64,000 nucleotides of DNA from Ylistrum balloti (GCF_031769215.1 NW_026782401.1:992001-1056000), one strand, 5' to 3'; positions 5,044 through 59,517 are shown, counted from the first letter of the stretch. Program-made: numbers and translations. Notes: a model not told the origin generated them from the sequence alone.

Positions 5044-8000
5044 GATTGGTAATAAATACGGGAAAACACAGATTACTTATGACGTGAAGTAATTTTAGAG
5101 TATACTGCAATAACGGGCAAGTACTAAACTCGTACACGACTATTTAGAAAAAACACCAAGGAATGATAATTGAAAAAGTCGTGTAGCGTATTACGGCATA
5201 ATCTGTGATAGGGCTATGTAATGCACAATGAATGTATGTATGTTCAGAAAATATGTACCATTTCAGATATGGCATCATTGAGTGCTACCAGATAATATGG
5301 TAGGATTTGAAAAACGTATCTCAAGTACCTTTGATAAAACCGTGTCTAGAATCTGTTTTGATTACTCTTTAAAATAAATACCTTATGTATATATTGTCAA
5401 ATCAAGTGTGCGAATTGCCTCAATGATTATTGCAATGTACATTATCACTGCAATGGCACACATTTATCTGAAATAAGACGAAACGAAATTTTGAAATATT
5501 TCTCTATTTGTACAAAAATTTCAAGAAACACAATGTAGCTATTTCTGAATTATGTCGTGGCCCTTACTGAAGGAATTAATATGTTACTTCGTGGGATTAT
5601 ATACTTATAAGCATTTTTTCTACAAAAACATAAATTCGCGAGCTTATACTTAAATTCATCCCGTTGCTATTGAAGTAAGCACCGTTTTAATTCAAACTCA
5701 ATGGAACCTACGCATTATCTATAATTAAACAAAGAATCATTTGTGAAATTTGAATACTGAATCCTAAATAACTACTCTGGGTTCCGAGTTACCGACAAGT
5801 AGTGCCAGGGACGCCCATGCGAGATATCAAGCAAACACATTTAAAAAAAATATATAAAACTGAAAAAATAACACTGTAACATTAATAAATATGAAATTGA
5901 AACTTACCAGGCACACCCAATATGTATATATATCTTGGTAGATAATTCTCTGGAAAATAGGACATTTACATACAATTTGCTGTTTAATATTTTTTCTTAA
6001 TAAACAATATCATGGCTTGCGATAAACTGCACGTGAATTCAGTTATAATTTATAAAGTGTTTAATATTTTAAATAAATGATATAGAATTACTATAAATTA
6101 ATGTGAAAATTTACATTATAATTCCAGTACAGTGGTGTGAGTAATGGGCTATTGTTACTGTATCTGTTAACTCGTTCTCTGTTTGAAGTTGGGCGATGCT
6201 TTTTTCTGTCTAAAGTTACCACAATTCGGGATACATACATGTTTGTTTCAATTTATAACTCTACGAAGAATGGTTAGGCACAAATCATATTTACTTATTA
6301 AAATCCTCCTCTGAACAAACCTATAATAATCAACAAGTTGATAGTGGCAATACATAAATATTACTAAACACATTATATAGCCAAATCCTAAAATAACGAG
6401 GAAAAACAGAAAGGATGTGGCAGGAACAGAAATATTTACATACTGTTGATTTTATCGATGTTCTTTATCATTAAGATTCGCTTTTTAATCATGGTATACT
6501 TTTGGATTATGATAAATTATCTGAAGTTGATGTTGTCTACTAATGGTAAAAAACTTATCGCGATTAACTCGGTTTACACTAGTTTTGATTAAAACAGTAT
6601 AATTTTGAGAAGAGTTCTTCATATTTTTAACATTTTGCTTTAACGCTAAGTATTTCACATTTTCGTATATTGATTTCATGGGTAATGGAATATAGTTTGT
6701 TTCTTATGTTTATGATTTCCAAACATCGAAATTGGTCGTTTTAATTTTGAAATGATATTGATACAATAGTTTGGACCGTTCCATGCCTCATAAATGACAG
6801 ATGGCTATAAATAACACTTATGTTTTTTTATGTTTTTGTTTTCGTTTTTTACATTTTGATGTAAAATTTAAGACCAAGAGTACGTTCAGTTGTCTAGATC
6901 TATTGTAGTCTTCGTCCTTTTCACGGTAAAATCTGTTCAATTGTGTGACATCAGATATGCAGTCCATCATTTAGTGGCGAGTGACCGACGGAACGGAACA
7001 GAGGACTGCGGACAGAATACATTAGTGACCAGAAGATGAAAGCTTGCCCACATAAGTTAATCACGAGAAGAAACAGTGGTCAAGCAACTAATTTCCTCCA
7101 CATGTGAGGTCACAGCGCGTGCGGCCAGTGTCCAATGGCAATTAAAGTCAGGTGGGGTGATTTACGCCTCCAACATTGAAGAGCTCTTCCTGTAGAGAAC
7201 GCGAATACAATCAAAATAATGCCCTGGATTCGAACTCATCTTGAAAATTACATTCGGTAAGACAGGAAGAGAGGGATGGGTCACTTTCCCAATATCTGCA
7301 CAAGTTAATTGGCTTTTCCGATTAATTAGATAATGGTCCACCGGTCAAGCAATTGACTGGACAATGGAATCTAAGGACATTATAGGCGTTGGTGCAGTTG
7401 GAATTTAATACCGACACTATGATTGTCAGATTGGGTCACGTGCTGAGATTCTAATGACTAACTGTATGACCAAAGAATGTATCAATAAAATTTTAAGGAT
7501 ATCTACTAAAGCTAGCAGAGGTTGAAATAGTTATTTATTTGTTTACGAAACCGATATGTTGTGAAAGAAAGAGAACTTCTTTTTCATACAACAACTAAAG
7601 GCCCTACGATGCAAGGGAGATAAATTGCGTTTTATACTACTGGAACAAGAGTAGTCTCCCATGTACCATACTAAAAATGATTTGTGTAAGTTATCTAAAT
7701 ATACACTACTCAAATTACAATTAATATGATGATATATAGTACATTTCTATAGCTTTATTCTACAAGGAAAGCGAGGCGAAGAGTGACATATGCTAGCACA
7801 CTATATCTTGTGAAAGCTGATTGTAAAGGGTCGCTTTTTGTGCAGATTACTTTGAAAACCTAACATGATTTATATCTGTCAGCAGAAAACTTAATGGAAA
7901 CATAAATTATATTTTCACCGAATTGTAACAACTGACCAGTAGATATACGCCGAGAAACTTCATCACGGATGGTCAGATATATTATTTGATTAGAATATGA

Positions 8001-10605
8001 ACGCGGAGTGGTGTATTTGCCGAAGCTCAGCCCTTTGATCCACGGCGGCGTGACCTTAGAGCGGTATAAATCAGATCGTATATAAAGATAGAAACACCTG
8101 CGAACATTCACCATACCATGTATTTGTCATTCCTGAGTATCGTATTTTTTAAAGAAATATAATATATCTACACATTCATATTATTATCTACGAGTACGTA
8201 TCATCTCTCTGCTTTCAGTAATGGGCGTAATTTTAAATTCCGTATTCACTTCTCACTTGATGAACGTGGCTCAAAATTCAAATGCTAGTCTTCCGTTTTA
8301 AATCTAAATGTGTACATTTATAATCTCGGTTGCTAAATGTTTTATCAACTCAGAGAATAAAGAGGCTGTTCATTATATACCTTATGTGTATATATATCTA
8401 AGCGTATCTATATAGGTTGTTATTTGTATTCGACTACTAGGCATAGTAAAGGATGTAAACAGATGTTTTGTGAATAATCCTTGCCATTATATTACATTAG
8501 TTATTACATGAGACTCATTACAAAGTGAGAAAGTAAAGAGATGTAATTCATGAGGCAAACAAACTACAAAGGCACTCTTACTACTGTGTCAAGGGGGATA
8601 ACTGCGTTAAAACAATAAAGATGGTAACTTGAGTGCCGCACAACCAGATGGTTTGTAGCGTCCGGATTTGTCAATGTTTTAAAAATCGTTTCAAAATGGT
8701 AGAAAGAGAAAAAATGAAAACAACTGGGAAATAATGGGAAATTATCATTAGCCTGCACGTCTGATTAGTCATAAAAGTGTTGTTTGTTGTAGATACCGGA
8801 TGTGTACGTAATTATACCACAAAATGAATAATCGATAACGTGAACATCAAATAAACAAAACAGCACGAACCTTCATAATAAATATGTGATTTCTTCTTAA
8901 AATGAACATATCGTGGGCGTTTTGCATTGTAACTGGCTTCTAGATTTTAAATGAAATTATCTTGGAATGTTATAACAAATTGTAATGACATTGGGGTTCA
9001 GCTAGGTGTACCGATACTATTGTATCAGTCGGAAGTCGTGTAGGTATCTATAGTGTCATTTCTAACAAGAAAGCTTGCCTACTCGCATATAGAGTTAAAG
9101 ATACAAATGTTCCAGAAAAAAAATCCTACTAAAAATAAAACTACACAAAATTAATAATAAAAAACAATATTTTGTAATTTTGCCTTTCTTTATACTCAGG
9201 GTACTTCAAAATCACTAACAGTTGTTATATCTATAAACGAATTAATGCTGTTTTAAATAGATTTGTGGATGTGTTCACTGACACTAGATGCGTGTCGTAC
9301 GTCAAGTTTGATGTTAAATCGGAATGACGTCAGCCATTACTTGTCTTCAGTCCCAATTGCAACAGAGCAAAGGTTGATCATGTCTTGAGGGCAATATTAA
9401 TTAATACCCTGTTCGAATCATCATGAAGTTTTAACGAAGTGAACTTTAAAGTTCTTGATATCTCATTGGCCAAATAATGACTGAATCTACTTTTCAGTAT
9501 ATTATCCGCAAATCCTATGAGAAACAATGTGATGGAGATATCCCAATGTTTTACGTCACTTCCTGTCAGACGCCGTAACATTCTTTGTATTTTTCTTACG
9601 AAATGACATTTGAAATGATAAAAGTTATCTACTTCATTTCATTAACGACGATCACAGACTTCTAATTAGGCTAATGTAATTTCTATGACAAGGTAATTGA
9701 CAGAACTTTTTAACTTTTCAGTTGGAATCTTGATATTGATTTAATCACATATTCGCCTCGACAAAAACACATAATTGATAGTTATTGATTAATTTCAATG
9801 CAATTATGTAATATCATTTTTACATCTGTCAATTTGATCTACTTAAATGATGTTTTAAAAATGAATATCATTAGCAATAAGCATGTAATTGTTTACGACA
9901 TAATTTATTTTCTTGAGTTATTTTTTGTTCCGTTATTTGACAGATTTGACGCGTGGTATTAACTGGTTCAATGCGTGGAAGAAACCTAATTGTTCCGTAA
10001 TGCGAAGTACCATTATACCTAAATCATGGTACACGTCGCACTTGGGAACCGGCGTGTGAATAGCTATATAAATGCATGTCAACATTTCAAACCTAAAAAA
10101 GAATCAAAGAAATCGTACTTCCTAATTGTAAATACCTGTCAACGTCCGTCAACCTTACGTCAACAGCGATTTCTAACATAACATAGAAAATCAATATCTG
10201 TGCTTCACCACAAGGTCCGACGAGCACCAAGATTCGCCAGCTTAAAGCAAATGAAACATTTTGAAAAAACTCTAAATTGTAAAATGATTCATATTCAGAA
10301 ATGTGAATAATCACTTAAATCACAAACATATGCGTAAAATAATCAGATTCCTCCAATCTATTTTGAAGAAACTTAACCCATAAGTTGGCACGTGGTTGAA
10401 TGTTAAGCTAAATAAGCATGCTAACACAATGTTCTGAGAGAGAATATTGTCATGCATGCATGTGGGTTATTACAAAACGAGTGATAAAGGGGTCTTATAC
10501 CCAATTTAACGTATGTGGTAATCATTACGCTTGTGAATAGCTCTCCTGACCGATTTATTTACAAGGTTGTTATTTATGGTTTGTAAATACTCACTTTGAC
10601 AGACA

Positions 10606-10619
10606 GGGTCATAAGGTCA
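10606..10619 (+). promoter_or_regulatory. Perfect DR2 nuclear-receptor element (GGGTCA-TA-AGGTCA)
   Basis: Exact match to RGGTCA-N2-RGGTCA in a motif-rich island. Function untested. Confidence 0.45.
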
Positions 10620-11370
10620 AAAGTTATGCCTTACAACGTAATCACATATTGCGTGATGTTAATTGTTGGTAAGGTGTTCGATGTCCGATATGAATGAGAT
10701 CTGAAGGTGGGTGACGTTCTAATTCACGAGAAATGCGTGATGATTTTTATTATCTTGTACGGGTTCCAAATTTTATTGAAAAGCTTGTCGACAGCCTTGG
10801 CAGATTATATTGACTAGCTGTCGAATAAGGTCAGATGACTTCAAAACGCATTTTGTAAACTTGAGTACCTTTCATGTCAACAGATTCGAACTTTGGAAGA
10901 ATAATGAGCGCCTGATAAGGCTGTCCGTGATTTACTGTATTATATGGATGATGTATCCAAGATAAGTAAGTTGTTTATACACATACTACGATATTAACAG
11001 TACATTTAGTCTTAATTTGTATATTTTGGAGGATGAAAATATATCTTTTGTTTGTTTTCAGTGATTAGGAAACTTTGAGTGTGATGCAGTTTGATAACTT
11101 ACTGAAGACATAAGTTAACAAGTGGAAAAACGAACCTTAAAAATTTCCATCCCCAATAGCCGTTAAATGTTTCATAGTCTCATATAGCAACAACATCGCA
11201 GGACCCCAGTAATACCAATAACTTTCGTCTATTTCAGGGACATTAACACTAACTAATTATACTTTGGCTATGTACCTTACGTCGTGAAGCCATTACGTGA
11301 CATCTCCATACATGTCTATCGACACTTTCTTTACTGCGATTTATTTTCTATCCACTTCCCAATACGCTTT

Positions 11371-11497
11371 GTTATCAAGTGTGACTTGAACCGTGAACAA
11401 CGACCAGAAACACTGTGTTATCAAGTGTGACTTGAACCGTGAACAACGACCAGAAACACTGTGTTAGCAAGTGTGAACCGTGAACAACGACCAGAAA
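11371..11497. repeat. 46-bp minisatellite, about 2.8 copies
   Basis: Unit gttatcaagtgtgacttgaaccgtgaacaacgaccagaaacactgt starts at 11371 and 11417. The third copy at 11463 has a 5-bp deletion and a T>G change. Confidence 0.95.
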
Positions 11498-11707
11498 ACA
11501 ATCAAAACATTGACTGTCATAAGTTATCTGTTTATTGCTAGTTCAGATGGCTCTTAAATACCAAAGGAAAGATAATTCACAAACAGTTTGATCTAATATT
11601 TACCTACAGGTTAAGAGACAATAGTAACAAGTTACGCCTGAGGAAGGGGGACAGCCTTCTGGTTAAGACTATCTTGGGTCTTCCTTACAAAGAGTTCATA
11701 TTTCTAT

Positions 11708-11752
11708 AACTAGCCCCGATATCTTCACGGGCGTGTTCCCGTGTTTAACTAG
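11708..11752 (+). mobile_element. Helitron/HINE-like terminus (GC hairpin followed by CTAG)
   Basis: Hairpin CACGGG-cgtgtt-CCCGTG (11726-11743) is followed 5 nt later by CTAG (11749-11752), with AACTAG on both sides. It lies about 230 bp downstream of the 46-bp array. Confidence 0.4.
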
Positions 11753-11979
11753 GAAAACGATTTGCATGATATTTCCTTAGATTCAGTGACGGACAATGTA
11801 ATGAACACTTTATGTAGCGTATCAAAACAACTGCATAATGTCATTGATTGTACCATTCATTTCCTGTGCCGATGACGTGATACAAAATGCTTTAAAGCCA
11901 AATTGTGGAAATGAACAGATGTAGACCGAGTAACATTAATTGTCGAGATTCAGTTTTTAAAAGTTTAGCGCGAAGCTCA

Positions 11980-12690
11980 GTTTAAAAATCAAATGCTGTG
12001 TACTCGATCAAAACTCCACTAGAAAATACCAACATATTACCATGATCGCAACCGTAACACGAAGTCAATATAACAGGGGAAAAAAGTACATGGAGGCTCA
12101 TAAAAAAGAGAATAAGACAAGGTGTCCCGGAAGAGAAAGCGCTTTCTGCTTCATCGACAACATTTGCCATGTCAAACTTGGTTAACCAAAGAAGGAAATG
12201 TCACGTATTCATATGAGGAAAAAGGTATACAACAACGGACCCAATAGCCAAATTAATGAGCATCAAACGTGACCAGCATAGCTCAAAGAAATAACGTATC
12301 ACTCAGTGAGATCACTATGACGACCTTTAAACTTACCCATAATTTTCACAAGTCTGCATCATTTGAATCATTATGTTACGAGTTTGTCCGTCAGTTGTCG
12401 ACTTCTTGCACGAAAATCATGATAATGGGAACAGTCCCTTAGATATCGAATCAACTACAACATGTAGACATCATTGGTTTGGGATGCAAGGATTTTTGTT
12501 ATCCAGAAATGGAAAACTGGAAATAGGGAAACGGAAAGAATCTCGCTCATTATACAGCTTGTTGGAAAGCTGTCCATATCGGTTCCATTGTAGGAAAAGA
12601 CCGAGATAAGTGTCTAATGTAGAAGGGCCTGTTGTGATTTTGCTTTCCAATTCTGATGGGTATATACGATTGACCTTGTTAATAAATCTC
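11980..12690 (-). mobile_element. Penelope-like retroelement relic: RT C-terminus plus 3' trailer (probably Naiad-type)
   Basis: Minus-strand translation of 12690 to 12302 gives RFINKVNRIYPSELESKITT...YLGLFLQWNRYGQLSNKLYNERDSFRFPISSFPFL, then after a frameshift DVYML*LIRYLRDCSHYHDFRARSRQLTDKLV...GKFKGRHSDL. This matches the PLE RT end pattern IYP.ELEIK...YLDL...KLYDKRD.F.F.I..FP...YGVYISQLIRY.RAC...KFYGRH.DL. No GIY-YIG domain follows the RT. Confidence 0.85.
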
Positions 12691-26104: not shown

Positions 26105-26260
26105 AGTACAAAGAGAATAAGACCAGGTGTTCCGAAATAGTACACGTCTTCTGCTTCATTGACGACACCAGCTATGTAAATCATGGTCAATCCAAGTAAG
26201 TAATGTCACATTTCGCAAATGAGAACTATGTATATTGAAACTAAAGGCAAACTTACGAGC
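26105..26260 (-). mobile_element. Diverged copy of the PLE 3' trailer
   Basis: gaataagaccaggtgttccgaaa...ttctgcttcattgacgacac...aatgtcac aligns with gaataagacaaggtgtcccggaa...ttctgcttcatcgacaacat...aatgtcac at about 12110-12205. Confidence 0.75.
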
Positions 26261-27390: not shown

Positions 27391-29228
27391 TATTGTAGAT
27401 GATATTGTGGAGAGTGTAAATAATTCTTACTATTACATACGTGTCCATTTACTGGTATCCAAATAAAACAAACAGTTACAATGGTATATAAACTTATTAT
27501 ATTTTAAATCACTGTTCAATGAGAATTGAGCGTTAATAAGCATTTGCATTTTCTGACAATACAAACACGCAAGAAACTTTTTTTTTCTGCACAATTCTGT
27601 TCAAATTGCAAATTCATTTTCGCCATATTTTTCCATTGTCAAGTCTTCCCTATGATAATGGAGTGTTGTGAGGTCTCCAACTACAAAATATCCATAATAA
27701 CCCGATGTTATGTGTTTCTATATATATTGTTTAAGTTCTCATTGGTGTATGGATAGTAAAGGACTACTACTGCATTATCAAAGGTTTGAATACAGTCACC
27801 AAATATACATGTATGTGCTGTATTAAGTGAGCACTTGTTTTTGGAGCAGGGCGTAAACTGTTTGGTTGTATGCCTATTTTTTCAGCTATTGTTCACCTCA
27901 TTTGGAAAACGTGATATTCGTTTCTAAATGGACCAAAATTTACATGACGGAGAACATAGATGAAGCAGAAGACTTTATCTTTTCCGAAACTATTGGTTTA
28001 ATTAGCTCTGAACGTTTTGGGAGTCTGTGTAAATCTGTCTTTTATTAATATTTTGCAATAGTGTTTGGATTGAGCTTGTCATCCTTTCTATTTTGTGGTT
28101 TATTTTGTTTTGTATTCTTTCAAACGTATCTAATTGATTTTACAATGGTTCTTTATGAATATATTAAAAAGCCGAATGGCAGGTATTTGTTGATACCAAC
28201 AACATACTATTTATATACGATGTCCTGACATGCATACAATGTACATATACCAGACGCTGATCTAAATGGGTGCTGAATCTGTTGAAAATTAAAGACTTTC
28301 AGTTAGTAAAGGGATATGTCGATGGGAAACATCTTTTAGTTTGTCTTGTGAGCGAAGTTTCTGAATCTAATATGTATTGCTCTTTTTTCTGTTGTTTTTG
28401 TTTTGTTTTTGTTTTTTTAATAAGTTCATTTCCTTATTCAATAACGAAATGTCAAACAGCTCCAGTTAATATTCTTTTATTAATATCCAGGTTTTATCTT
28501 CTTATGTCATCAGCTAATTGCCAATATTTTGCACATATATGTAGTTACATATCGGATCGACTTTCACAGAAAATGACAGACTATGACCTCTAACTGGATG
28601 ATATCGAGATATTCACATAATACCTGTATCATTATTACACCTTTTAGCATATTTTCACACATAATGTTATTCATTTAGTTTAGTAAGTGATATCGACGGT
28701 AAGGTCCAATGTTCATACTGAATCCTTACAAACAAATTTTCGTTGAATGCATATTCCTTGAATAGATATATGATCAATAACGCCGTAACGACAGTATGGA
28801 CAAGTGAATCGTCAAATTTTCGAGACAATCCATCCCTTTACCAAGAAACAAAATATTTCGCACGTTATATCACGTACACAGAACATGACACAAAGACAAA
28901 GTAATAAACTGTAGACGAAATCATCATCCGGTGATTACTTGTTACTCGTAGATCATAATTTATACTTTTTGTCTTTTTTATTTCTATTTTCTCGTAGAAA
29001 TACATGCAAAATGTGTTAATGTGTTACTTTTTTAGGTTTCACATTCTTTGGAAAATATTGTTCACGTTTAAAGTCAACATTTCATTTCTTACAGTGGTAC
29101 GAGTGTGTGGAAGCCCAAAACTACAAGGCGATGGTTTAGTCAGCTGCGCCATGTCAAGATTTTCTGGCCTGTCATCCGCCGATGTAAAAAGTTGTGCGAT
29201 TGGTCTTTCTGGTACCGCTCGTGCGAAT

Positions 29229-29244
29229 TGACCTCAGTTGACCT
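29229..29244 (-). promoter_or_regulatory. Perfect DR4 nuclear-receptor element (AGGTCA-ACTG-AGGTCA)
   Basis: The plus strand reads TGACCT-CAGT-TGACCT, inside a GC/CpG-rich island. Function untested. Confidence 0.45.
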
Positions 29245-30054
29245 GCATAAACAAACAGTTCCGGAATAAACACAATTATATGACTATTTTTTGCTTTGCT
29301 GGCCAATAACGTGGGCACTTTAGAGAAAGTCATTTTAGTACGTTGCATATTTTACATATCCTCCCAGCATGATACTTGGACTCCAAAAAAAGCAGGTAAG
29401 GTGTTATTATGTTAAAATTTATTTCTATGATACACAACTGATGATTATAAGGATACATTATTTAAACTTTAACTTTCAAATCTGTGCAATGTATGCTGCT
29501 TTCAAGTCAAGATTAACTGATATTGTTTCCATACGTGGTTGAGTATCTGAAGTAATCCTTACCGATACAACACACGCTTGTACACTTGGTGTTTGATGAT
29601 ACACAGTGATTTACTATGTTATTCTAGGCGAGAAGATACTCGTAAAATTTGCTTTTATTACCGTTTTATTACATGCTTAGTCATAAAGTAGCAATAGATG
29701 TTACACTGCAGCCTTTCACTTTTGAACAGTGTAAATTACAGCTCGAAACATCACCAATGATTTTGTATACATGTTGCGTTATGCATACGGAACAACATAC
29801 AATATCGAATGAATCCATACATTATTTAAGCCAATAGAATAACACAAGTTACACAGACCTCAGCGCATAACATACCGACGTGTGTGCTGAGACCTAAACT
29901 GTGTACTGTTGGTTATTAGTTTATTCCGATGGGTATGAATGATCGATGGAAACGCATGTATTCTGTCTTTATGTCAATACTTCAAGCAAGGAAACAAATT
30001 GGAAAATTGTGTTATCTTTTTTGATAATGATAAACTCATTACCATTTTCATTAA

Positions 30055-30244
30055 NNNNNNNNNNNNNNNNNNNNNNNNNNNNNNNNNNNNNNNNNNNNNN
30101 NNNNNNNNNNNNNNNNNNNNNNNNNNNNNNNNNNNNNNNNNNNNNNNNNNNNNNNNNNNNNNNNNNNNNNNNNNNNNNNNNNNNNNNNNNNNNNNNNNNN
30201 NNNNNNNNNNNNNNNNNNNNNNNNNNNNNNNNNNNNNNNNNNNN
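30055..30244. other. Assembly gap (190 N)
   Basis: Run of N. Confidence 1.
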
Positions 30245-34583: not shown

Positions 34584-34948
34584 GAATATCCTATGAACAT
34601 TTATCCTGCCACTGGCGCTGCCATTGTCAGAATACACCTACTACATATATGTTTGCTGTATTCGGCAGTGACGGAAAACAGATGTATTTTAGCACGTGCA
34701 TTGATTCTACAGAATTTCTGTCTGATTTACTTAGACGTTTCATTTAGAAATATAAATCCCTGGTTTTAAGCGATTTTATTTATTATTACAAAATATAGCC
34801 ATTAGCGCGGACTAATAATTATTTTGACGTGCGTTATCAGGCATAATTCAGCGTAACATCAAGGTTAGGTAAACAAAGAGTAAATAGCCCTAACAAACAG
34901 TTGAAGTTCAATAGTCCGAATTTTCAGTAAGTATTGCAGGATAAATAG
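34584..34948. mobile_element. MITE-like non-autonomous element, copy 1
   Basis: Direct repeat of 36446-36853. An 11-bp (sub)terminal inverted repeat runs ATTTATCCTGC ... GCAGGATAAAT. No ORF. Confidence 0.75.
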
Positions 34949-36445
34949 AATACATGGTTAGTGCCAGAAAACTAATTCGCATTTTTACTTGGGACAGAAA
35001 AACGAACGTGGTTAGCATTTGCCTGTTTTATATTGTAAGTCACTGACCATAAAGTTTCCATGTTTTTCCAGAGAATGACACAACATGAGTATATTCCATA
35101 GGAATTAAAATTAAAAACCAAAATCTTGTGTGATCTTCTGTGTCGTATTTTCATCACTCTTGTACTCAATATGGGGTGAGCACATCACTATAAGCTCCTA
35201 CATAAATTTGTTTGTAGCTTGTATTTAAAGGAACAAAGGATGGGTTTTTTCCCCTATGTAGACTATCCCAAACATATTCCTGAATCTATTATAGAAAGCA
35301 CAATAGACACAAACGTGAAAAGCACGTTTTAATACAAATTTAGAATAAAATACAATAGAGCCAAACAATGAATTTAACTGAATAAGAAAGCTGTTTCGTC
35401 GTTTTGGAACTCGTCATTGATGCTAATGGCCTAGAGTTTTGAAGTCTAGGAAGCGACAGAGGAAAAAAAGATGGAAGGAAAAGTCATAATCCAAACGATT
35501 GCAGTAGCCCTATTATTAAATAACTTCATTGTTTTCATCTATCAGTTTTGAACACGGTCATTTACAGGTGTATGTTCTGATCAGTGCCACTATTTACATG
35601 CGATGAAACGTGGCATGCAGTTTACGGCAAACCTCGAGGACTAAAGTTCACTTGAATTTAAATAACACAACGCTTGTTTACAAAAAATCATTTTAGCTAG
35701 TTGGCAAGTACGCTTGTCGTTTTTTAAGCAAACTAAAAATGAATAATTTCTTGAAATATTTTTAGCGTGACCATGTGGTATTTACAATTGATTCGTACAC
35801 TAAATGGCTACAAGTCATTAGTAATATGCCACTAAATTTCCGGAAAGCAACAACTGCACAAACAAATAGTATAAATATTGCTTGTATTGAAATAAGTATG
35901 GTTTTTTTCTTCCGATTTATTTGCAAATGAACAGAAATTTCTGCGGAGTTCAGTGTAGTGAATGGAAAACAGCGTTCTCATTGGTCAAAACCAAACCCAA
36001 TAACATTGTGACGATTTGACTGGTTACTAGCTCCTAAGTGTTTTGTAAAGAATTGCTCTTCATAATACGTTCATTTAGCTTATCTCCCCTAGTCTGAGAC
36101 TTACAGTTAGACATATCGTAAAGATAAATAATATTGTAAAGCTGAATTTCTTCTATAATTTTAATATTCAAGAGACGGGGCCAGTCTAGGTGAAGATGTA
36201 AGGGTGAAATGAGGATATAGATTATTTATTTTATTGGTAGTAATGTACTTTCACTTCTATTTAACGTTCTGAACGGGTCATATTATTGGTCGTTTGATGA
36301 CAAATTTTTGGACTGGTCTAATTAACTAAGGATAATGCCTTCGAAATTAGGATGTTCTACTTCTTTGAGCAATATAAAGAATTAAAATGTCCAATTTTCG
36401 TTAGTATGCCTTGTGGTATCATTGGATTAGCTCCATTTTCATTTT

Positions 36446-36853
36446 GAATATCCTATGGAAATGTATCCTGCCACTGGCGCTGCCATTGTCAGAATACACC
36501 TACTACATATATGTTTGCTGTATTCGGCAGTGACGGAAAACAGATGTATTTTAGCACGTGCATTGATTCTACAGAATTTCTGTTAGATTTATTTAACCGT
36601 TTTATTTTAAAAATATAAATCCCTGGTTTTAAGCGATTTTATTTATTATTACAAAAATATAGCCATTTTCAAAAATTCCTGAAATTGCTTTTAATATCCA
36701 TTAAAGTGTAAAACTATATTTCATCGCGGACTAATTTTTTTGACGTGCGTTATCAGGCATAATTCAGCGTAACATCAACGTCAGGAAAAAGAAGGGTAAA
36801 ACACCCTGAAGCTCAAAAGTCTGAATTTTCAATAAGTATTGCAGGATAAATAG
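36446..36853. mobile_element. MITE-like non-autonomous element, copy 2
   Basis: 120 bp (36464-36583) are identical to 34602-34721, with further identical blocks downstream. It carries an extra ~55-bp internal segment and ends in GCAGGATAAATAG. Confidence 0.75.
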
Positions 36854-39259
36854 TATGCCTTGTGGTTTCATTTTATTATATCGATTCTAATTTTATAAAC
36901 GTGAGATTATTTTGATTTACCCAGATTCGCCTGTTAAAGAAGTAGACACTTATGTACCTATGTTCCAACAGCTTTCTTGTTAATTTCCTATTTGTAACTT
37001 TTGTTCTATGTATGTTTTATACATTTTGAGTCTTGGTTACAACCTTCTTATCATTGTGTTGTGGATTGACGAGATTGCCTTTATTCGTGAGAGCTGAGTT
37101 GTTTTGATATAAATTAGACAACTATTATGAAAATAATACATTCATCAAAATTGACAACACAGTATTTTCTGTCATCAGCATCACTGAGTATATGCTTTAT
37201 ATATATAATGTAAAGGTATATGAAGTTACATCGGAGAGTAACGGCAAATACCGTCCGACTTCGCGTTCAATATTAATTCTTACTGCTGTTATTAGTGGTA
37301 CTTGTTCTTCCTCTTGTAAAATGACGAGCTAGTGTATCCCCCGTCCTCATTGCGACATTGATTTCGGTAATTTTTCTTTAATAATATCATTAGTTGTGCC
37401 ACATTAAGGATGCTCTTCTCTGATGTTTGACCGGAAGTAGGGCATAATTTAATATAACGTTAATATTTGTACTTACAAGCTGAACAGATTGGAAAAGTTT
37501 TGCTGTATATGACGGTTTGAACAATTTTCGTTTACTTACCACATTTATGAATGAGCAGTTGTCGGCGTAATTTTTATGAATAGCACCAACAATGTCAGCA
37601 GTAATTCTCTTGAAATCTTACACGAATTGTCTTTACATTTTACTGATTTCAAATCCCTGCATTCTTCTTTGGTGGGCTTCTTTCGCTCATTTTTAGGAGC
37701 TGACAACAAACATTAAAGCTTGGTGATGGAAAAATGGCTATTTGGATGGAAATTAAAAATAAAAGAGCACAGACTGCCTCTTTTTAAATCATTACAGATG
37801 TCCCCTACAAGTTCCTTTATCCAAATATAAGATCTTAAAAGTTAAATACAAGACGATTGTTAAGTCCAGGATTGACGTTATTTGTTCAAATTTTCATTTG
37901 TTGGTTACTTTGTAGATTTCAACTCATTGAATCAAACGAAAACATGGCATTTTCACCTTATTCTTACTTTACCTTACTATTATCCTTAAATTAAAACAGA
38001 AAATTTGTTTAAAGGAATGCCTATTATTGAAGAGAACAATTATGGCTGATGTGAGAAAATTAGTTATTTCCATCAAACATATTCCGAGGCCTATATCAGA
38101 AAAAAGAGAGTACAGCAACACATTGATTCTTTTGCTTTTAAATCATTTTCTTTATCTAACCATCCAAAAATCATCACGAGAACAACAGTTTAAAACTGAA
38201 AGAGGTTACATACTTACCGTCGAAGAAAAGACGGTTTTAAAAGAGCCGCGTTTATATATTGATGAAAATAAACTATTTACTGTCAGTTATGTCCTCTGAG
38301 ACTTCCAAATCCTGATTTGGTGGAGCACCATGTGGGTATACCAGTCTGGATGTCTGTTTCAATGTTGACGGTCTTAAAAACAGTGAATTCCGATTATGTC
38401 ACTTAGATGTGAATTAATTTGCATTTACTATTTTAAAACAGTGAACAGGTGTTCGTCAATTCAAATAATGCTCCGATGATTTTATAACATCCTATCTAAC
38501 GCAGATCAAAGCATTAATGGCTTTCGCGTGTATTCCAATGGAATGCATTTGTGTACCAAATGTACAGGAGAACAACATTAGTGTCCATTCTACGTGCTTA
38601 CGACAATAACAATGAACAAATACATAATTTCATCGGTAATTGAAATTGAAAATGTATCATGAAAGCGTTATCCAGACTATGCAAAATCGTTATATTCAGC
38701 ATGTAGAGCCTTTGTTGTGTCCGAGGATCAAATTTGATCATAGAATATATCATGAAACATTACGGATAAGAATGTTTCCTAATTGGCGAGTATGTAAAAT
38801 ATCTCTAAAATGAATCACAATAGATTAGTTCACAGAGTACATGATTCTAGACTATATTAAAGTTTAAACATATCGGCATATATATAAGATTTCCAATATG
38901 TTACAAATAGATGCATTTATCTATATTTTACTTCTGATACTGGAAATGATTTCTGTTAAGCGTCGGCTTGACGCTTGTTTGAAAGTAAACGATATTGATA
39001 TTGTAAGACATATTTAATATCAGGTTAATGAACATCTCATAGATGCTTAAACTTTTTTTTATTTCAGCTAACCAGTACTTAAATTTATGATCTGAGTGTG
39101 GTCTTTTGTATATTCTATCGAAAGTGCTTACCAAGTAGAACGGTAATTACACTTCGGATTCACTTTTTCATTCTCTTAATAACAAAATACCATTTTATAC
39201 AACATTCATGGATTTTTTGTATTATCTGGTAATGTTGTTTGGCACTTCAGAATGTGTTT

Positions 39260-39408
39260 NNNNNNNNNNNNNNNNNNNNNNNNNNNNNNNNNNNNNNNNN
39301 NNNNNNNNNNNNNNNNNNNNNNNNNNNNNNNNNNNNNNNNNNNNNNNNNNNNNNNNNNNNNNNNNNNNNNNNNNNNNNNNNNNNNNNNNNNNNNNNNNNN
39401 NNNNNNNN
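39260..39408. other. Assembly gap (149 N)
   Basis: Run of N. Confidence 1.
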
Positions 39409-42400
39409 ATAGCCAAATGAATGGTTTACCTACCTCGTTACCATTTTCGCGTACTTTCGTTACGTTTTTACTTACAATTCCCCTTTTGACGTACTTCCTA
39501 CATATAACTCATATCTTTTCAGAGAACACATCTCTTTACACCGTATTTCTTTTGTCGTTCTGACATTACGTTCGTATTGGTGTAAACACCATTCCTCTGT
39601 CTGTTCGAACCGATTTATAATCATCCGCTACTTCTCTCAGTTCAAAATGTCAGTCATTGAATGGATGGCAGCTAAAGAGTATTGACATATGCATCATATA
39701 TATCATACGATATCTTATTTAACATTATGTTCCATACACATTTACATCTGTATAAAGCACACCGACAAACTAGGATCTCGGTATCAATGAAAGAGCTTTA
39801 ATAGGTGTTTTGCAACAAAGAGTCGCTATAATAAATGGGTGTGGGAGTTAAGTTTGCAGTGATTTACTTGTTGAAGCAGTTCTAAAAGTTGGCCCTTTTA
39901 CAGCAGATAATATTGTTTTCGTTAGTTATTTCTACTCCTAGGGATCCATGTGACATCTGTGTCATTCCTTGTAGCTTTGTTTTTGTTCCTTTTTTAAAAC
40001 GTGTACGTGGTGATGACATTACATATTAATATTAAAACGTCTGTTTCACTTTGGAGTTCAAAACATAAAACTTCTGTCAGTAACAAATAAACACATTCAA
40101 TCCGTGACTGATTGTACAATTTTGCACCAGAAACATTTTTACCCAGTGTCGATGTTACCTTGTGTAACTGTTTATGGATAAACCGTGTAGAAACCTATCT
40201 GAAACAGATGCATTTGATACAACAACCCATTAACAATAAGTAATAACACACACATCAAAAGACTTAATACATATAAGGTTAGAGTTAATTAAACGGCTCT
40301 GTCAAGATGTCAAGTTTGTCAAATTCCAAAATATGTTACGTTCACAAAGAGAGAGCTGGGGCAGCGACTACGCAACAACAATAATCGCTTATGTAGCAGT
40401 CATCCTAAATATCGTGTTGTAATAAACATACGACGAGCAAAATAGTAATCACTAAAAGTCTACAAAAATGCATAAATGTTAGGAAACCGGTAATTTGCAA
40501 TTATCACAAATATATAAATATTCTAGTCTAACAGTTTGTGATCTTTAAATTCATTCATATAAAAGCTAGAAGATGGATCATCCGTAAACATATCTAGAAA
40601 CAGCTCGTTGTATCAGTTATCAGGTTGGAATATTCAAAGTAAACCCAGGGACGCAAAAGTGACCGCATTGACTTCTATAACCTAATGATGACCTGTACCT
40701 GATGACCTTTAACTTCAGTCCGGACATGTTTGACCACCTCGTTGAAATCACACCTATGGTGTCCATTAGCATATATACACACAAATGGGTCTTAATCTCC
40801 GCCTCAGTGATAGCATCTATATCCTCAGTTTAGTTTTCTTCCTATGTTCATATTTGCTGAATCACTTTCCTACAGGGGCCGGACACATCAAAGTGACCAC
40901 AGTCTGACCGCTGGTCACTCAGGGATATATTTGATGGACGTATATCGCTTCGATCTGACCATAGAAGGCCAGCCAGTTCACTCTTAGAGTACATTTCCGT
41001 CGCCCTGAATGCATTGCTATTATTTACATTTGACATAGCTAAGATTTTAACCATTAATGATTGCATAGTTAAGTATTTGTTTTCAAAAAACTGATCACCT
41101 ATAATATCATACGCTATTTATAACTTACTCAATTTTCTGATTCCTTAGAGTGAACTTGATGTCTACAATAACATTAACTCTGCAACACTTTCTCAAATTC
41201 TCATATATTATGGTTCTCTGTCGTGTTTGTGTAGATTTTCCTGTCATATACGGACAACACATATCTATATAATGAACAATATTCCTTATATTCCAATTGT
41301 TGTACTTCATATACCACTAAATTTACATTGTAAAACGTTATTGTATGTTTAGAAACTATATGCTGAAACAGCTACATTACACACAATACCAAACAAATAC
41401 AAACAATACCGGTTTGAAGAGTTTGAAGATATTTTCCCCAAGGATGGTTTACCTGATTATCTTCTAGTTTGCACATTATGTTTGTCGGCACGTAACCTTT
41501 ATGGACATATGCCACACAAGTGCTATTTCGTTTAGTCCAATTTTTCAAAAGTTACAAAAAAAACACCACCTTTACTACGAGCTTTTGCTGCTTTGCAAAA
41601 ATACGTAACAAGAGTGCAATAAGTCCAATAAACAACAACTACAAGATTGCTTGACCTGTTTCTAACACAATGATAGATACACTAAGGCGATGAACTGATC
41701 TGTCCTCTGCCCAGGGTTGTTATGGCATGGCCTGTATTGAAATGCCCGCTAATTAGAATGCACAAATGATAATTCAGAAGTATGTGGAAATAGTGTAAAA
41801 ACGAACAACAAACTGATATATTTCGATTTAATAATGATTATTACCAAAACTAATCATTCCCTTCCCTTTCTACCTCCAGCCAATCAAAATGCGTTTAGAG
41901 TTAATTACAAGTGTTTTCTTTTTTTTCTTTACGCAACAGTTGCAATGATTAAATGATGGTTTGAGAGCTGGATAACACCTACCCATTGTAGGTATATGTA
42001 TATTTTGCTATAATTTAGTAATACAAATGTCTATGTTAAAGTTACTTTTTACTGTGAAACTAAATAATTGAAATTCATATATAAATGCAAAACGATAAGA
42101 TCAGTGTATAGGACTGTATATATCCCCGTATCCTTAATTGACATGTTATTTCATTGTTTTCTGTGGATGTATTTAGTTACACAAAGTGAATCAATTTCAA
42201 CATACTTCATATTTACGAATAAACTTGATTGTTGTTTAACAGAAAGAGCTTTAGAACATAGAACACTAACAAAGACAAATAATTCTTTCCGGGGTAGAAT
42301 CATTATTCATCTCTGTCAGTCAATCAGACATATAACAACAAACAATAAGGTAATTTAAAAAGTCATATTTGTAATATTAGCTAGAATTAAAGTAATGCTA

Positions 42401-46180: not shown

Positions 46181-46280
46181 TGACATACATAACGTCTATA
46201 TATTATGTAGGTAACAATTCAATAATTTATATATGAATATGACATACATTACGTCTATATATTATTTAGATATCAAATTC
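46181..46280. repeat. Degenerate tandem duplication, period 59 bp
   Basis: tgacatacataacgtctatatattatgtag at 46181 vs tgacatacattacgtctatatattatttag at 46240. Confidence 0.85.
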
Positions 46281-48154
46281 ATCTCTAAAATGTACCAGAC
46301 GTTTTAGGTAGTGCATGATTATGCAAGATTTAATATGATTAAGGAAGGTCAATGGTGATGCTTTGAAGTAAAAATAATTTGCAAAAGGAAACGGGAACTA
46401 CGGCTTTTGATTGAAGATCACATTTGATAGATCATTTTCTTGATAATATATTTAAACCATTGAAAAAATGTAAAATAAAAAGATAAAAATAACAAATCAT
46501 ACATAAAAATATTGTGTCAAGGTAAGTGTTTCTATTTCAATTTTTAAATCATATTTACCAGACAGCAAACGTTCATAATTTAATGTCAAAGATGTAATGA
46601 TTTTGAAATATATTTATGTTAATATTTGATGGTAGTTAAAATTAAGTGAACAAAAAATAATGTTATGACTTATAAAAGACTATTTATAAAATTAATAAAT
46701 TGTTTCCTTTAAACAATCGCGATTTTCAGAGATATTTAAAAACTTAAAAGCAAAGGTAACTGTGAAGAGAAAGAGTTATAAAATCTCAAAAAATAGAAAC
46801 CACAATAATACAAATATAGGAATCATGAGGAAGGTAACATAGATTTATAAATATTAATGATATTGTTTTGGTCAACGTATATTTTGTTAGGAAATTCACA
46901 GCCACTGACATTCTTATACAGAAGCTGGCTTAAACTATTTGATTTAAGCATAGTATTGCCATAATAATCAGTAGTAGGATTTTTCACAAGTTATTACAAC
47001 ATGATTTTCCTTTCGCTAAACAAAATAAAATCTGCTGAATTTGACAAGATAAAGAGGTCGTGAATCAAATCAGATAATTACATTGATCTCCAAAATAAAA
47101 AAAAGTTCATTGATTGTAATATAAAATTCATTGCTACTGAAATTGTGAGTATTTTGTATTTACATGCAGATTTTCATTTCCACCATTAAGTAAGTCTACA
47201 AACAAGGCTACATTTTCAAAATTAAAAAATGTCTCTGCTGTTTTTGATTAGGACAATCAAAATGCTGTTCAGAAAAAGATTTCTTGATACACATCCTTCT
47301 CTATGTAAATAATAAAATAAACAAAGAAATAAAAACTACTGATTAAACTTACTAAATATCTATGTAAATTTGTTGTGTTTGGGAGACATTCCTGTGACTG
47401 GGGCGGTAAATGGGACCACCTGTACTCACGACGTAATCGATCTAAGTTCGTATTCTTGCCTAAATCGCTATCTTTGTGTAGTATCCAATACCTGGAGTGG
47501 TTCGTCTATTGACACGTCCGTCAGGCCACAACCGACCGATTTGTCTCCCATTCCACACGGCACGCCGATGAAGTAATCCTTCTAACTCCTATTATCCGTC
47601 CGTTTACTCGCTTTCTTGTGACTGTCCGTGTGTCCTTTAGATGCTCAACTGCCAAAGAAAGGACGAAATAAAGGTCATTTTAAATATTTCAGTAAACAAA
47701 GACTGCTTATCCCTTCTCCGCTTTCTCCAACAAGATCTACTTAGAGTCTTTGTATGTTGTCGACTGGTCTCCGTGGTTTGGCTAGGCTTCACCCAAAGTA
47801 CAGATGCTAAACGAAACTCGTAAACATATCACATCCAGGCATATATCGGACCTAAATGGGCATTAAGCGTTTGATATCACTGTGCTATTGTTGTTTTATA
47901 GTCCCTTTGCCCATTTCGCATCTCTTTTTATCTAACAGGTAGAAATAGGCAGAATAAAAGACCGATGAATACCTGGACACTTCGTGCAACATACCCAAGC
48001 GCCAAATCGGTGGGACATCCATAATTATACTTCAAATTATTGTTTTTAAATGAGTAATAACTTTCACTGCCTCTTTTCATCTTTGGCAGATCCCAAGGAG
48101 CTCAGAATTTAAAGGATGCGTTTGACCCTTTGGCCTCCTGATCGTAAAGTACGT

Positions 48155-48330
48155 GTCTGAATCTTGATATTCTATTATTGAAATTCAATTTTCCTTTTTG
48201 CAAATATTGGATGTTCAATATGCCGCGAAGTAAGGCGTGTATACCTGGTTGATAATATCTGAATCTGGATATGTTATTACAGAAATTAAATCCTCCCTTT
48301 AAAAAAAAACAAATTGGATGTTCGATATGA
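48155..48330. repeat. Degenerate tandem duplication, period about 102-107 bp
   Basis: ctgaatct(t/g)gatat at 48157 and 48259; attggatgttc(a/g)atatg at 48206 and 48313. This explains the internal repeat seen in the 48102..48377 minus ORF. Confidence 0.75.
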
Positions 48331-48539
48331 ATAATAAAATAAATGGTAAAAATAATAGGAAAAAGGGGGTTTAGCATAGCACTTTATCTACTATTAACTG
48401 CAGTTCGTTTAATAGAGGATAATAATTGACATTGAATAAGAAATTTTAACTTTTTCAAATTTTGAATTTTATTTGCGGGATATTTATTTCTATGGAGGAA
48501 CCTGAATGGATGTTTTTTGTTTCATTATTATTATTAATA

Positions 48540-48556
48540 TTTTTTTTTGTTTTTTT

Positions 48557-48607
<51 letters not shown>
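48540..48607. repeat. Long poly(T) tract (50 uninterrupted T at 48558-48607)
   Basis: Seen directly. Could be a minus-strand retroposon poly(A) tail. Confidence 0.95.
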
Positions 48608-48610
<3 letters not shown>

Positions 48611-49941
48611 TTGTTAACTCTCATTGTATATTATCTTAATCGAATTAGATGACTACGATTGCCTCACATATTCTGGAATCTGATATATCACAGTTTACGA
48701 TTTATTCCTTATTTCTAATCTTTAACTATACGTAAATAAGGTTAATCGTCTGAAACAAATACCTCGCTTTGTGGTAAGTAGTAATCCAATCACATTTAGT
48801 AAAATTACAGAATATACAATAGGCATCAAGACATTTGTGAATCGTATAAAAATATTGATGTATAGATAAAATAATATATAGTATTTTATGTATAACGTAT
48901 CGCCATCTCCGTAATGCTATGTTAGAACTGAAAATTCATTGGGAAGACACTAGAATGAGTATGAAAATATTTTAGTTTTATCTTCCTTCTTACAAGCGAA
49001 CAAGCCACAATAAAATGATATAAACCATTGAGAGTATGTTTAACAGAAACGTGTGTCTAAATTGGAAAAGTCATATTTTGATAGAACTAGACTCAAGGTG
49101 TCAAGTATCTGAATGTTCGATAGATACATTTAGAAGGGTACAGGCATAAATGTGACTTTGCAATAAAGTCTCCAATACACATATACAACATGACTTGCAT
49201 ATTCTCATCTTATCTTTACAGAGCGCATCGTTGCCTGTAATAATTATTTTAACAGGAAGTGGTTTTAAAGTTTACAAAATCCTTCAAACAATTGCTTTCA
49301 ATGAATTTGTGATTAAACCAGTGATCATAAATAATACTCATGTCTTCTCCAGACACTAAAATAGTTCAGGTGTATTCAGTAATATTACAAAGTTTTACAT
49401 TATTTACATTGTCCATTCAATATTTCACCTTTTGAAACAAAATCTTTGTCCCAGATTGTTCATGCCTGTTTTAAATAATGATCTTTGAGTTTAGAAATGT
49501 AAAAAAAAAAAAAAAAGGAATGATTTACTATGAGCTTTCCAACAAAAATCACTAATCTAATTTTCGTGTTCAGATCCATGAAAAAATATCCTGGAAAGGA
49601 ATTACACATTTGATTACACATAGGAAAGGAACTTAACTTATTACTCGCTCATTGAATAAATGTGGTAAAATGTACTGATAAAATATCAATATATATACTT
49701 GTATTTCTATCTAATATTATTATTTATTTTGGTTTCTTTATCTAATCTCTTCGTTACTAAAATGACAATGCCTTGCCTTTCCTACCAATTTTAATATCAT
49801 CGATATGATATACAACAGCATAATTTACTATTTCGCTAAAACGGTACGCGTAAATATCCGAAATCGTCTTAAGATAAACATGGTTTACATCAGCCTGCCT
49901 ATATCAAGGCTTTCAATGTTTTAGACACTGTTCGTCTTGCA

Positions 49942-49957
49942 TGACCTGTATTGACCG
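49942..49957 (-). promoter_or_regulatory. Near-perfect DR4 element (CGGTCA-ATAC-AGGTCA)
   Basis: The plus strand reads TGACCT-GTAT-TGACCG, one mismatch from consensus. Confidence 0.35.

Positions 49958-57987: not shown

Positions 57988-59517
<1,530 letters not shown>

What the first reader, a model, noticed from the sequence alone, without database searches (positions are those of the whole stretch)
6980..49957. Possible nuclear-receptor (hormone/retinoid) control system upstream of an invertebrate Antp gene
Seen: a perfect DR2 (10606), a perfect DR4 (29229), a 1-mismatch DR4 (49942) and two dense GGTCA/TGACC half-site clusters (6980-7440, 40660-40961), mostly in GC-richer islands. My rough estimate at about 33% GC gives about 0.05 perfect RGGTCA direct repeats (DR0-DR5, both strands) per 64 kb; two are present. 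Established: chordate Hox clusters are driven by RAR/RXR through DR2/DR5 elements, DR4 is the TR/RXR, LXR and EcR-type spacing, and molluscs have RXR, RAR and TR orthologues. Inference: this could be a ligand-responsive regulatory landscape for a lophotrochozoan central Hox gene, for example at metamorphosis. I know of no description of this, but I cannot search the literature. Caveat: TGACCT-rich motifs also occur in mollusc repeats.
Basis: partly seen in the sequence, partly recalled or inferred. Interest (0 to 1): 0.7.

Follow-up and report, generated by a model that had tools for sequence, protein, structure and literature searches.

The report
Receptor half-site clusters upstream of scallop Antp
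The gene-free stretch in front of a scallop-like Antp Hox gene is unusually rich in GGTCA motifs, the core binding site of nuclear hormone receptors; some lie in single-copy or conserved DNA, so they are good candidate switches, but neither receptor binding nor hormone control is shown.

Summary

They exceed chance. Two perfect repeats stand against 0.06 expected. Each cluster holds 8 cores against 0.5-0.8 expected locally. In an unbiased scan of all 512 5-mers, GGTCA is the top non-homopolymer motif.

Cluster 1 and the DR2 are single copy. The gene is an Antp/Hox7 orthologue, closest to Argopecten irradians.

Only the proximal 10 kb could be aligned with Argopecten. Both one-mismatch repeats there lie in conserved non-coding blocks and keep their spacing. 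The DR4-like site keeps 12 of 12 half-site bases.

Conservation of the two perfect repeats and of both clusters could not be tested. Four other organisms do share a few exact 31-mers within 28700-29700.

Perfect repeats occur near Antp in 4 of 5 other molluscs, but in 0 of 4 in a pre-registered replication.

Published work argues against retinoic-acid control of Hox genes in spiralians and against a vertebrate-type spacing code for oyster TR.

Verdict: these are probably cis-regulatory modules carrying nuclear-receptor-type sites. Ligand control is speculative.

The parts
6982..7471 (.). Half-site cluster 1: 8 GGTCA/TGACC cores in 490 bp of a GC-richer island (GC 0.44), mixed with AATTA/ATTAA homeodomain-type cores
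   Evidence: 8 observed against 0.79 expected locally, and GGTCA is the commonest 5-mer in the island; single copy (one contig per run, depth 10-17), and no variant falls in a core.
10606..10619 (+). Perfect DR2, GGGTCA-TA-AGGTCA
   Evidence: single copy, lying inside a stretch of about 1 kb (10294-11299) with no listed variant; not in a tandem repeat or a within-window repeat.
29229..29244 (-). Perfect DR4, AGGTCA-ACTG-AGGTCA, in a GC-richer island. Two forkhead-type ATAAACA sites follow directly (29248-29275), with a CCAAT near 29303.
   Evidence: GC of the surrounding 200 bp is 0.43, the 96th percentile of the window; runs of four other organisms hold about 5% of the sampled 31-mers of 28700-29700, but the shared piece was not localised.
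40660..40960 (-). Half-site cluster 2: 8 cores in 300 bp, 7 of them in one orientation. It includes a DR8 that arose from a 14-bp local duplication and a DR5 of cores.
   Evidence: 8 observed against 0.47 expected locally, the strongest non-homopolymer 5-mer cluster in the window; the open frames here have no Pfam domain. Copy number was not tested.
48123..48136 (-). One-mismatch DR2 (AGGCCA-AA-GGGTCA) at the edge of a conserved block. Argopecten has AGGTCA-AA-TGGTCA at the orthologous place.
   Evidence: the spacing and one half-site are conserved, and the mismatch sits at a different position in the two species.
49942..49957 (-). One-mismatch DR4 (CGGTCA-ATAC-AGGTCA) inside a conserved non-coding block
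   Evidence: all 12 half-site bases and the spacing are identical in Argopecten irradians, with one change in the spacer. A conserved AATTAATTGG lies about 50 bp away.
47630..48191 (.). Conserved non-coding block (86% identity to Argopecten)
49888..50051 (.). Conserved non-coding block (74-82% identity) holding the DR4-like element
50476..51516 (.). Largest conserved non-coding block (about 1 kb, 81% identity). It could be a promoter, a 5'UTR exon or an enhancer; this was not resolved.
55620..56008 (.). Conserved non-coding block (84% identity)
57465..57987 (+). Antp exon 1: ATG at 57465, YPWM hexapeptide, GT donor at 57988
   Evidence: 80% amino-acid identity to Argopecten irradians antennapedia-like.
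59282..59517 (+). Antp exon 2: homeodomain and stop codon. The spliced product is 252 aa.
   Evidence: PF00046, E = 3e-23; 97% identity to Argopecten Antp-like, 89% to Lottia goshimai Antp, 86% to chiton Hox7.
30055..30244 (.). Assembly gap inside the finding's span (not filled)
39260..39408 (.). Assembly gap inside the finding's span (not filled)

Best explanation
The 57 kb in front of this pectinid-type Antp/Hox7 gene is a gene-free regulatory landscape. By the usual cluster order it would be the Lox4-Antp spacer, but Lox4 is not in the window, so that is inference.

The landscape holds several single-copy, GC-richer cis-regulatory modules. Their most distinctive shared content is the nuclear-receptor core half-site GGTCA. 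It appears as direct repeats (a perfect DR2 and DR4, and conserved one-mismatch DR2- and DR4-like sites) and as two dense homotypic clusters. These often sit next to homeodomain-type (AATTA) or forkhead-type (ATAAACA) sites.

The most likely mechanism is that one or more nuclear receptors bind these modules and modulate transcription of Antp or a neighbouring Hox gene, together with Hox/Pbx and Fox inputs. Candidates are RXR homo- or heterodimers, or orphan receptors that tolerate many spacings, such as COUP-TF.

Shown: the motif excess, single-copy status (cluster 1 and the DR2), conservation of the two proximal DR-like sites, and the identity of the gene.

Inferred: that the modules are enhancers or silencers, that a nuclear receptor is the binding factor, and which gene is the target. 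Ligand dependence is neither shown nor implied.
For: - Perfect repeats: 2 observed against 0.063 expected, P = 0.001. This is within the top 1% of equally abundant motifs in the real sequence.
- Clusters: 8 cores each against 0.5-0.8 expected locally. GGTCA ranks 2-3 of 512 5-mers for clustering and is the top non-homopolymer 5-mer on the combined score.
- Copy number: cluster 1 and the DR2 are single copy. A neighbouring repeat at 12100-12499 shows depth 5000-12000 and serves as an internal control. No self or tandem repeats lie at any site.
- Conservation against Argopecten irradians: the background is saturated (51% identity). Even so, GGTCA cores are fully conserved in 5 of 13 cases against 11-12% for all 5-mers. 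Both DR-like sites keep their place and spacing, which only 0.42% of GC-matched motifs match.
- Other species: a perfect DR0-5 occurs in 4 of 9 other mollusc Antp loci, which only 0.68% of equally abundant motifs achieve. The Potamilus DR2 lies in a block conserved with Sinanodonta, next to TAATTAA.
- Literature: mollusc RAR/RXR and RXR/RXR bind canonical direct repeats (bioRxiv 10.1101/2025.03.09.642214; 10.64898/2025.12.01.691671). Oyster TR binds DR0-DR5 (PMC4692385).
Against: - There are no binding, chromatin or expression data.
- Conservation of the two perfect repeats and of both clusters could not be tested.
- The pre-registered replication of cross-species recurrence failed: 0 of 4 loci.
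- The spacing and position of the repeats differ between species (DR0, 2, 3, 5, mostly 3' of the gene), so there is no single conserved element type.
- Only 5 of 16 cluster cores have the purine expected at half-site position 1, and 6 of 16 read GGTCACT. This may point to another or a longer motif.
- The DR2-like site at 48123 lies in the less conserved edge of its block.
- No non-Hox control loci from these genomes were available, so a genome-wide excess of such repeats cannot be excluded.
Confidence: 0.45

Rival explanations
1. The islands are cis-regulatory modules, but the GGTCA/TGACC core belongs to a factor other than a nuclear receptor, or to a longer composite motif such as AGTGACC. 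The direct repeats would then be by-products of a high local density of that motif.
For: Only 5 of 16 cluster cores have a purine at position 1, and 6 of 16 extend to GGTCACT. In the shifted-motif tests, KGTCAA and WTGACC score as well as or better than RGGTCA. Spacing varies between species.
Against: All six half-sites of the three strongest repeats fit NGGTCA, and five of them fit RGGTCA. Spacings of 2 and 4 are classical. I know of no other animal factor family with a GGTCA core that binds direct repeats (from my own knowledge, not tested).
Confidence: 0.22
2. The reader's specific reading, which is a sub-case of the best explanation: the elements are ligand-responsive hormone or retinoid response elements (RAR/RXR on the DR2; TR, EcR or LXR with RXR on the DR4) that switch Antp, for example at metamorphosis.
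For: There is a perfect DR2 and a perfect DR4 and a conserved DR4-like site. Molluscs have RXR, RAR and TR, and RXR is ligand-sensitive and needed for organogenesis (bioRxiv 10.64898/2025.12.01.691671). An RAR antagonist lowers hox1, lox5, lox4 and post2 in oyster (bioRxiv 10.1101/2025.03.09.642214).
Against: Retinoic acid does not induce Hox genes in oyster, and Antp is not among the genes affected (same preprint). Platynereis RAR does not regulate Hox genes (PMC5821490). The mollusc RARs examined do not bind retinoic acid. Oyster TR is not activated by T3 or T4 and prefers DR3 and DR2 over DR4 (PMC4692385).
Confidence: 0.12
3. Chance plus composition: GC-richer islands raise the GGTCA count, and the reader picked, out of many known motifs, the one that happened to stand out.
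For: The motif was chosen post hoc. One-mismatch repeats are no more frequent than expected. The replication in four further species gave 0 of 4. The 34-bp Mytilus match beside the DR4 is at noise level.
Against: The local-composition expectation is 0.5-0.8 against 8 observed. Empirical ranks among all 5-mers and 6-mers are in the top 0.3-1% in three tests on six different places. The combined Fisher statistic is 48 on 6 degrees of freedom, second only to poly-A.
Confidence: 0.13
4. Some of the elements, namely those whose copy number was not tested (the DR4 island and cluster 2), derive from a dispersed mollusc repeat that carries TGACC motifs.
For: A high-copy repeat does exist in the window at 12100-12499. 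The 5% of 31-mers shared with other organisms around the DR4 could in principle come from a shared repeat.
Against: No within-window copies exist, there is no hit to non-syntenic places in nine other loci, and the frames carry no transposon protein domain. Cluster 1 and the DR2 are proven single copy. The known repeat family was detectable by self-comparison (12105 against 26110), whereas these elements were not.
Confidence: 0.06

Closest known systems
Chordate Hox retinoic-acid response elements (DR2/DR5 RAREs bound by RAR/RXR, e.g. at Hoxa1, Hoxb1, Hoxb4, Hoxd4)
   Same: Direct repeats of RGGTCA lie in conserved non-coding blocks of a Hox cluster, next to homeodomain (auto- or cross-regulatory) sites. 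A DR2 is present.
   Different: No DR5 was found. There is no sequence homology or positional correspondence to chordate RAREs. This is a central Hox gene in a bivalve. Mollusc RAR does not bind retinoic acid, and retinoic acid does not induce spiralian Hox genes in the published tests. Binding was not tested here.
Thyroid-hormone / EcR-type DR4 response elements
   Same: One perfect DR4 and one conserved one-mismatch DR4. The second half-site of the DR2 has a TAAGGTCA-type 5' extension, which from memory is the preferred TR octamer; this was not checked.
   Different: Oyster TR binds DR0-DR5 with DR4 among the weakest and is not activated by T3 or T4 (PMC4692385). No autoregulated receptor gene is nearby.
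Homotypic binding-site clusters in developmental enhancers, and orphan receptors such as COUP-TF, Svp or HNF4 that accept many spacings
   Same: Two clusters of 8 cores in 300-490 bp with mixed spacing and orientation sit in a gene desert next to a developmental regulator, alongside homeodomain and forkhead cores.
   Different: The bound factor is unknown. Position 1 of the half-sites shows no purine preference.

Membership tests
Nuclear-receptor direct-repeat response element | Two RGGTCA half-sites in the same orientation, separated by 0-5 bp | tested here: met
   Perfect DR2 at 10606 and perfect DR4 at 29229. There are four further sites with one mismatch.
Nuclear-receptor direct-repeat response element | More frequent than composition and real-sequence background allow | tested here: met
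   P = 0.001 against the Markov null and the top 1% of equally abundant motifs. No genome-wide background was available.
Nuclear-receptor direct-repeat response element | Half-sites and spacing conserved in related species | tested here: inconclusive
   Met for the DR4-like site at 49942 (12 of 12 bases and the spacing) and partly for the DR2-like site at 48123. The perfect DR2, the perfect DR4 and both clusters could not be aligned with any other species.
Nuclear-receptor direct-repeat response element | Bound by a nuclear-receptor DNA-binding domain, with transcription depending on the sites or on a ligand | not testable with these tools
   Needs EMSA, DAP-seq, CUT&Tag and reporter assays.
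Chordate-type Hox RARE | Retinoic-acid-dependent activation of the Hox gene through RAR/RXR on a DR2 or DR5 | not testable with these tools
   Published data argue against it in spiralians (PMC5821490; bioRxiv 10.1101/2025.03.09.642214). Only a DR2 is present here.
Antp / Hox7 gene | YPWM hexapeptide, Antp-type linker and homeodomain, no UbdA peptide, and best matches to Antp/Hox7 orthologues | tested here: met
   No tree against Lox5, Lox4 or Lox2 was built.
Dispersed repeat / transposon-derived sequence | Many copies in the genome | tested here: not met
   Cluster 1 and the DR2 lie on one contig at single-copy depth, while 12100-12499 shows more than 100 contigs. The DR4 island and cluster 2 were not tested with reads, but they have no self-matches.

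The most novel reading that the evidence does not exclude
A nuclear-receptor input (RXR with a partner, possibly ligand-sensitive) acts directly on a central Hox gene in a bivalve through conserved direct-repeat elements. In that case a receptor-Hox link either predates chordates or arose independently in molluscs, for instance to couple Antp to settlement and metamorphosis.
Probability: 0.12. Interest if true: 0.8.

Novelty: new member of a known kind. Interest (0 to 1): 0.45.

Why it matters
The current view, based on Platynereis and oyster data, is that direct nuclear-receptor (retinoid) control of Hox genes arose at the base of chordates.

This window supplies concrete candidate elements in a mollusc Hox landscape: a perfect DR2, a perfect DR4, two half-site clusters and two conserved DR-like sites. 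They are short and single copy where tested, and two lie in conserved blocks. They could go straight into EMSA or DAP-seq, ATAC or CUT&Tag, and reporter tests.

A positive result would change the history of Hox regulation. A negative one would show that even strong motif statistics in a Hox desert can mislead.

I found no description of such elements in a spiralian Hox cluster in the searchable literature.

Tried and rejected
1. Fetching orthologous distal sequence by searching spurious ORFs that overlap the sites. The word search with the 77-aa frame beside the DR4 found nothing. Exact look-up of 10 ORFs over all sites found none in the collection, not even from the window's own species. I therefore did not spend the costly representative search on this trick.

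2. Two exact-pattern scans of metagenome contigs, one for the DR4 with its flank and one for the adjacent forkhead-like piece. Both gave 0 hits.

3. Deep conservation. The Antp loci of Mytilus, Potamilus, Haliotis and Patella share only the homeobox exon with the window. The 34-bp Mytilus match beside the DR4 (E = 0.03) is at noise level, and the DR4 itself is absent there. A 64-bp AT-rich match to Patella is non-syntenic and compositional.

4. A tRNA-derived SINE in cluster 1, suggested by a GGATTCGAAC-like string. ARAGORN and Rfam found nothing.

5. Coding potential of the islands. No Pfam domain was found.

6. Population variation as a test of constraint. The four runs carry the same haplotype differences, so the variant-free stretches around the DR2 (1006 bp) and cluster 1 (690 bp) are not significant on their own.

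7. Cross-species recurrence. The first batch gave 4 of 5. The pre-registered second batch gave 0 of 4.

8. GC content as a predictor of conserved blocks. It is only moderate (AUC 0.77), so it cannot stand in for an alignment.
Full report
**The gene**

The window holds one clear gene. It is a two-exon Hox gene on the + strand.
- Exon 1 runs 57465-57987, with a YPWM hexapeptide and a G|GTCAGT donor.
- Exon 2 runs 59282-59517 and encodes the homeodomain (PF00046, E = 3e-23).
- The spliced product is 252 aa.

Exon 1 is 80% identical to 'homeotic protein antennapedia-like' of Argopecten irradians. The homeodomain exon is 97% identical to that protein, 89% to Lottia goshimai Antp and 86% to a chiton Hox7. 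It has the Antp-type linker and no UbdA peptide.

So the window comes from a scallop-like bivalve that is not Argopecten itself, and the gene is Antp/Hox7. The 57 kb upstream has no other convincing ORF, no tRNA and no Rfam family. Its identity as the Lox4-Antp spacer is inferred from the usual cluster order; Lox4 is not in the window.

**The observation**

The statistics hold up under several tests.

- With a Markov model fitted to each 1-kb block, 0.063 perfect RGGTCA DR0-5 are expected and two are found (P = 0.001). Allowing inverted and everted arrangements as well gives P = 0.0065.
- The shuffles ignore real-sequence structure, so I also asked how other motifs behave in the real window. 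Of 1697 degenerate hexamers of similar abundance, 0.94% have two or more perfect direct repeats. Several of those are frame-shifted versions of the same TGACC motif.
- Each cluster has 8 cores against 0.79 and 0.47 expected from local composition. GGTCA is the single commonest 5-mer in both islands.
- Among all 512 5-mers, GGTCA ranks 2nd (300 bp) and 3rd (490 bp) for local clustering, behind only A/T runs. It is the only complex word with two separate clusters of 8.
- Combining repeat spacing, clustering and conservation, GGTCA is the top non-homopolymer word.
- One-mismatch repeats, taken alone, are not more numerous than chance allows.

**Assembly gaps**

No element touches a gap. The nearest distances are 811 bp (DR4 to the gap at 30055) and 1252 bp (the gap ending at 39408 to cluster 2). 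The flanks of the gaps do not overlap. Continuity across them could not be tested, so distances are approximate. The gaps were not filled.

**Repeats**

No site lies in a tandem repeat or has another copy in the window.

I laid Logan contigs of four runs of the window's species on 6500-12499. One contig per run, at depth 10-17, covers cluster 1 and the DR2. The stretch 12100-12499 attracts more than 100 contigs at summed depth 5000-12000. That is a built-in positive control, and it shows that cluster 1 and the DR2 are single copy.

They have no self-matches, no matches to non-syntenic places in nine other loci and no transposon protein domains.

**Conservation**

Only the 10 kb next to the gene could be compared, using the Argopecten irradians locus L001.

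- The background is saturated at 51% identity in a global alignment. Discrete blocks of 74-86% identity stand out at 47630-48191, 49888-50051, 50476-51516, 52871-53004 and 55620-56008.
All 12 half-site bases and the 4-bp spacing are identical in Argopecten, with one change in the spacer. A conserved AATTAATTGG lies about 50 bp away.
The mismatch is in a different half-site there, and the site lies in the less conserved edge of its block.
- As a control, I asked for every degenerate hexamer how many of its DR-like sites are kept at the orthologous place with the same spacing. RGGTCA scores 2 of 2. Only 0.42% of GC-matched motifs reach two.
- GGTCA cores as such are fully conserved in 5 of 13 cases, against 11-12% for all 5-mers.

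For the distal elements I found no route to orthologous DNA. One hint exists. Runs of four other organisms, from six other studies, hold about 5% of the sampled 31-mers of 28700-29700. This points to a short ultraconserved or shared piece somewhere in the kilobase around the perfect DR4, but I could not localise it.

Beyond scallops nothing non-coding aligns.

**Recurrence in other molluscs**

In the ±10 kb around Antp, a perfect RGGTCA DR0-5 occurs in Argopecten (DR3), Mytilus (DR0), Potamilus (DR2) and Haliotis (DR5), but not in Patella. About 0.02-0.04 is expected per locus.

I wrote down a prediction before fetching four more species. It failed: Liolophura, Gigantopelta, Lymnaea and Sinanodonta have none.

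Over all nine loci, 0.68% of equally abundant motifs have repeats in four or more species. The Potamilus DR2 lies in a block conserved with Sinanodonta, next to TAATTAA, but Sinanodonta has two changes in it.

The recurrence is therefore suggestive, not universal. The elements differ in spacing and position, and no non-Hox control loci were available.

**What binds?**

GGTCA is the nuclear-receptor core, and the three best repeats have classical spacings. Two features weaken the fit.
- In the clusters only 5 of 16 cores have the purine at position 1.
- Six of 16 read GGTCACT.

Another factor or a longer motif is therefore a serious rival.

The literature lowers the specific hormone reading.
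- Platynereis RAR does not regulate Hox genes (PMC5821490).
- In oyster, retinoic acid does not induce Hox genes. An RAR antagonist lowers hox1, lox5, lox4 and post2, but Antp is not listed (bioRxiv 10.1101/2025.03.09.642214).
- The mollusc RARs examined do not bind retinoic acid, though RAR/RXR and RXR/RXR do bind canonical repeats (bioRxiv 10.64898/2025.12.01.691671).
- Oyster TR binds DR0-DR5, with DR4 near the bottom, and is not activated by T3 or T4 (PMC4692385).

Orphan receptors or RXR dimers that tolerate varied spacing fit the mixed architecture better than a vertebrate-style spacing code. This is inference.

**Verdict**

These are probably cis-regulatory modules of the Antp landscape with nuclear-receptor-type sites (confidence about 0.45). 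Ligand control is a minority possibility (about 0.12).

I found no published description of such elements in a spiralian Hox cluster.

Noticed in passing
window 12100-12499 (related fragment at 26110-26209): A high-copy dispersed repeat: more than 100 Logan contigs per run match it, with summed depth 5000-12000 against about 15 for the flanks. A copy with 76% identity lies at 26110-26209.
   Followed up: partly
window 11370-11497: A 46-bp tandem repeat of 2.9 copies. All four runs of the species carry one copy fewer (they skip 46 bp). There is also a 13-bp insertion polymorphism behind 11915.
   Followed up: no
window 28700-29700: Runs of four other coded organisms (C-F, six other studies) hold about 5% of the sampled 31-mers. 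This could be a short ultraconserved or shared piece near the DR4 / forkhead-site island. It was not localised.
   Followed up: partly
window 50476-51516: The largest conserved non-coding block: about 1 kb at 81% identity to Argopecten, 6-7 kb upstream of the Antp ATG. It may be a promoter, a 5'UTR exon or a large enhancer.
   Followed up: no
window 58720-59281, 60680-60801 and 62557-63186: Further blocks conserved with Argopecten: about 560 bp of the intron just before exon 2 (85% identity) and two blocks 3' of the gene (74%).
   Followed up: no
window 47401-57464: The 5-mers most over-conserved against Argopecten are ATAAA, GGACA, AATTA and CAAAG. Three of these are homeodomain/Cdx-like and TCF-like cores, and GGTCA comes next. 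This is the composition expected of developmental enhancers.
   Followed up: partly
window 34584-34951 and 36446-36856: A local segmental duplication of about 400 bp at 78% identity.
   Followed up: no
window 10416-10470: A run of CATGC/GCATGC words (CATGCATGCATG). It is among the more clustered 5-mers, about 150 bp upstream of the DR2.
   Followed up: no
L005 15568-15878 (Potamilus) and L011 15292-15587 (Sinanodonta): A unionid conserved block 2.4 kb 3' of Antp joins TAATTAA to a DR2. The DR2 is perfect in Potamilus and has two changes in Sinanodonta. This echoes the homeodomain-site plus half-site pairing seen in the scallop blocks.
   Followed up: partly
window 48540-48607: A run of 68 T just after the conserved block at 47630-48191. 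Argopecten also has a long homopolymer run in its upstream region, at L001 about 4540-4600.
   Followed up: no
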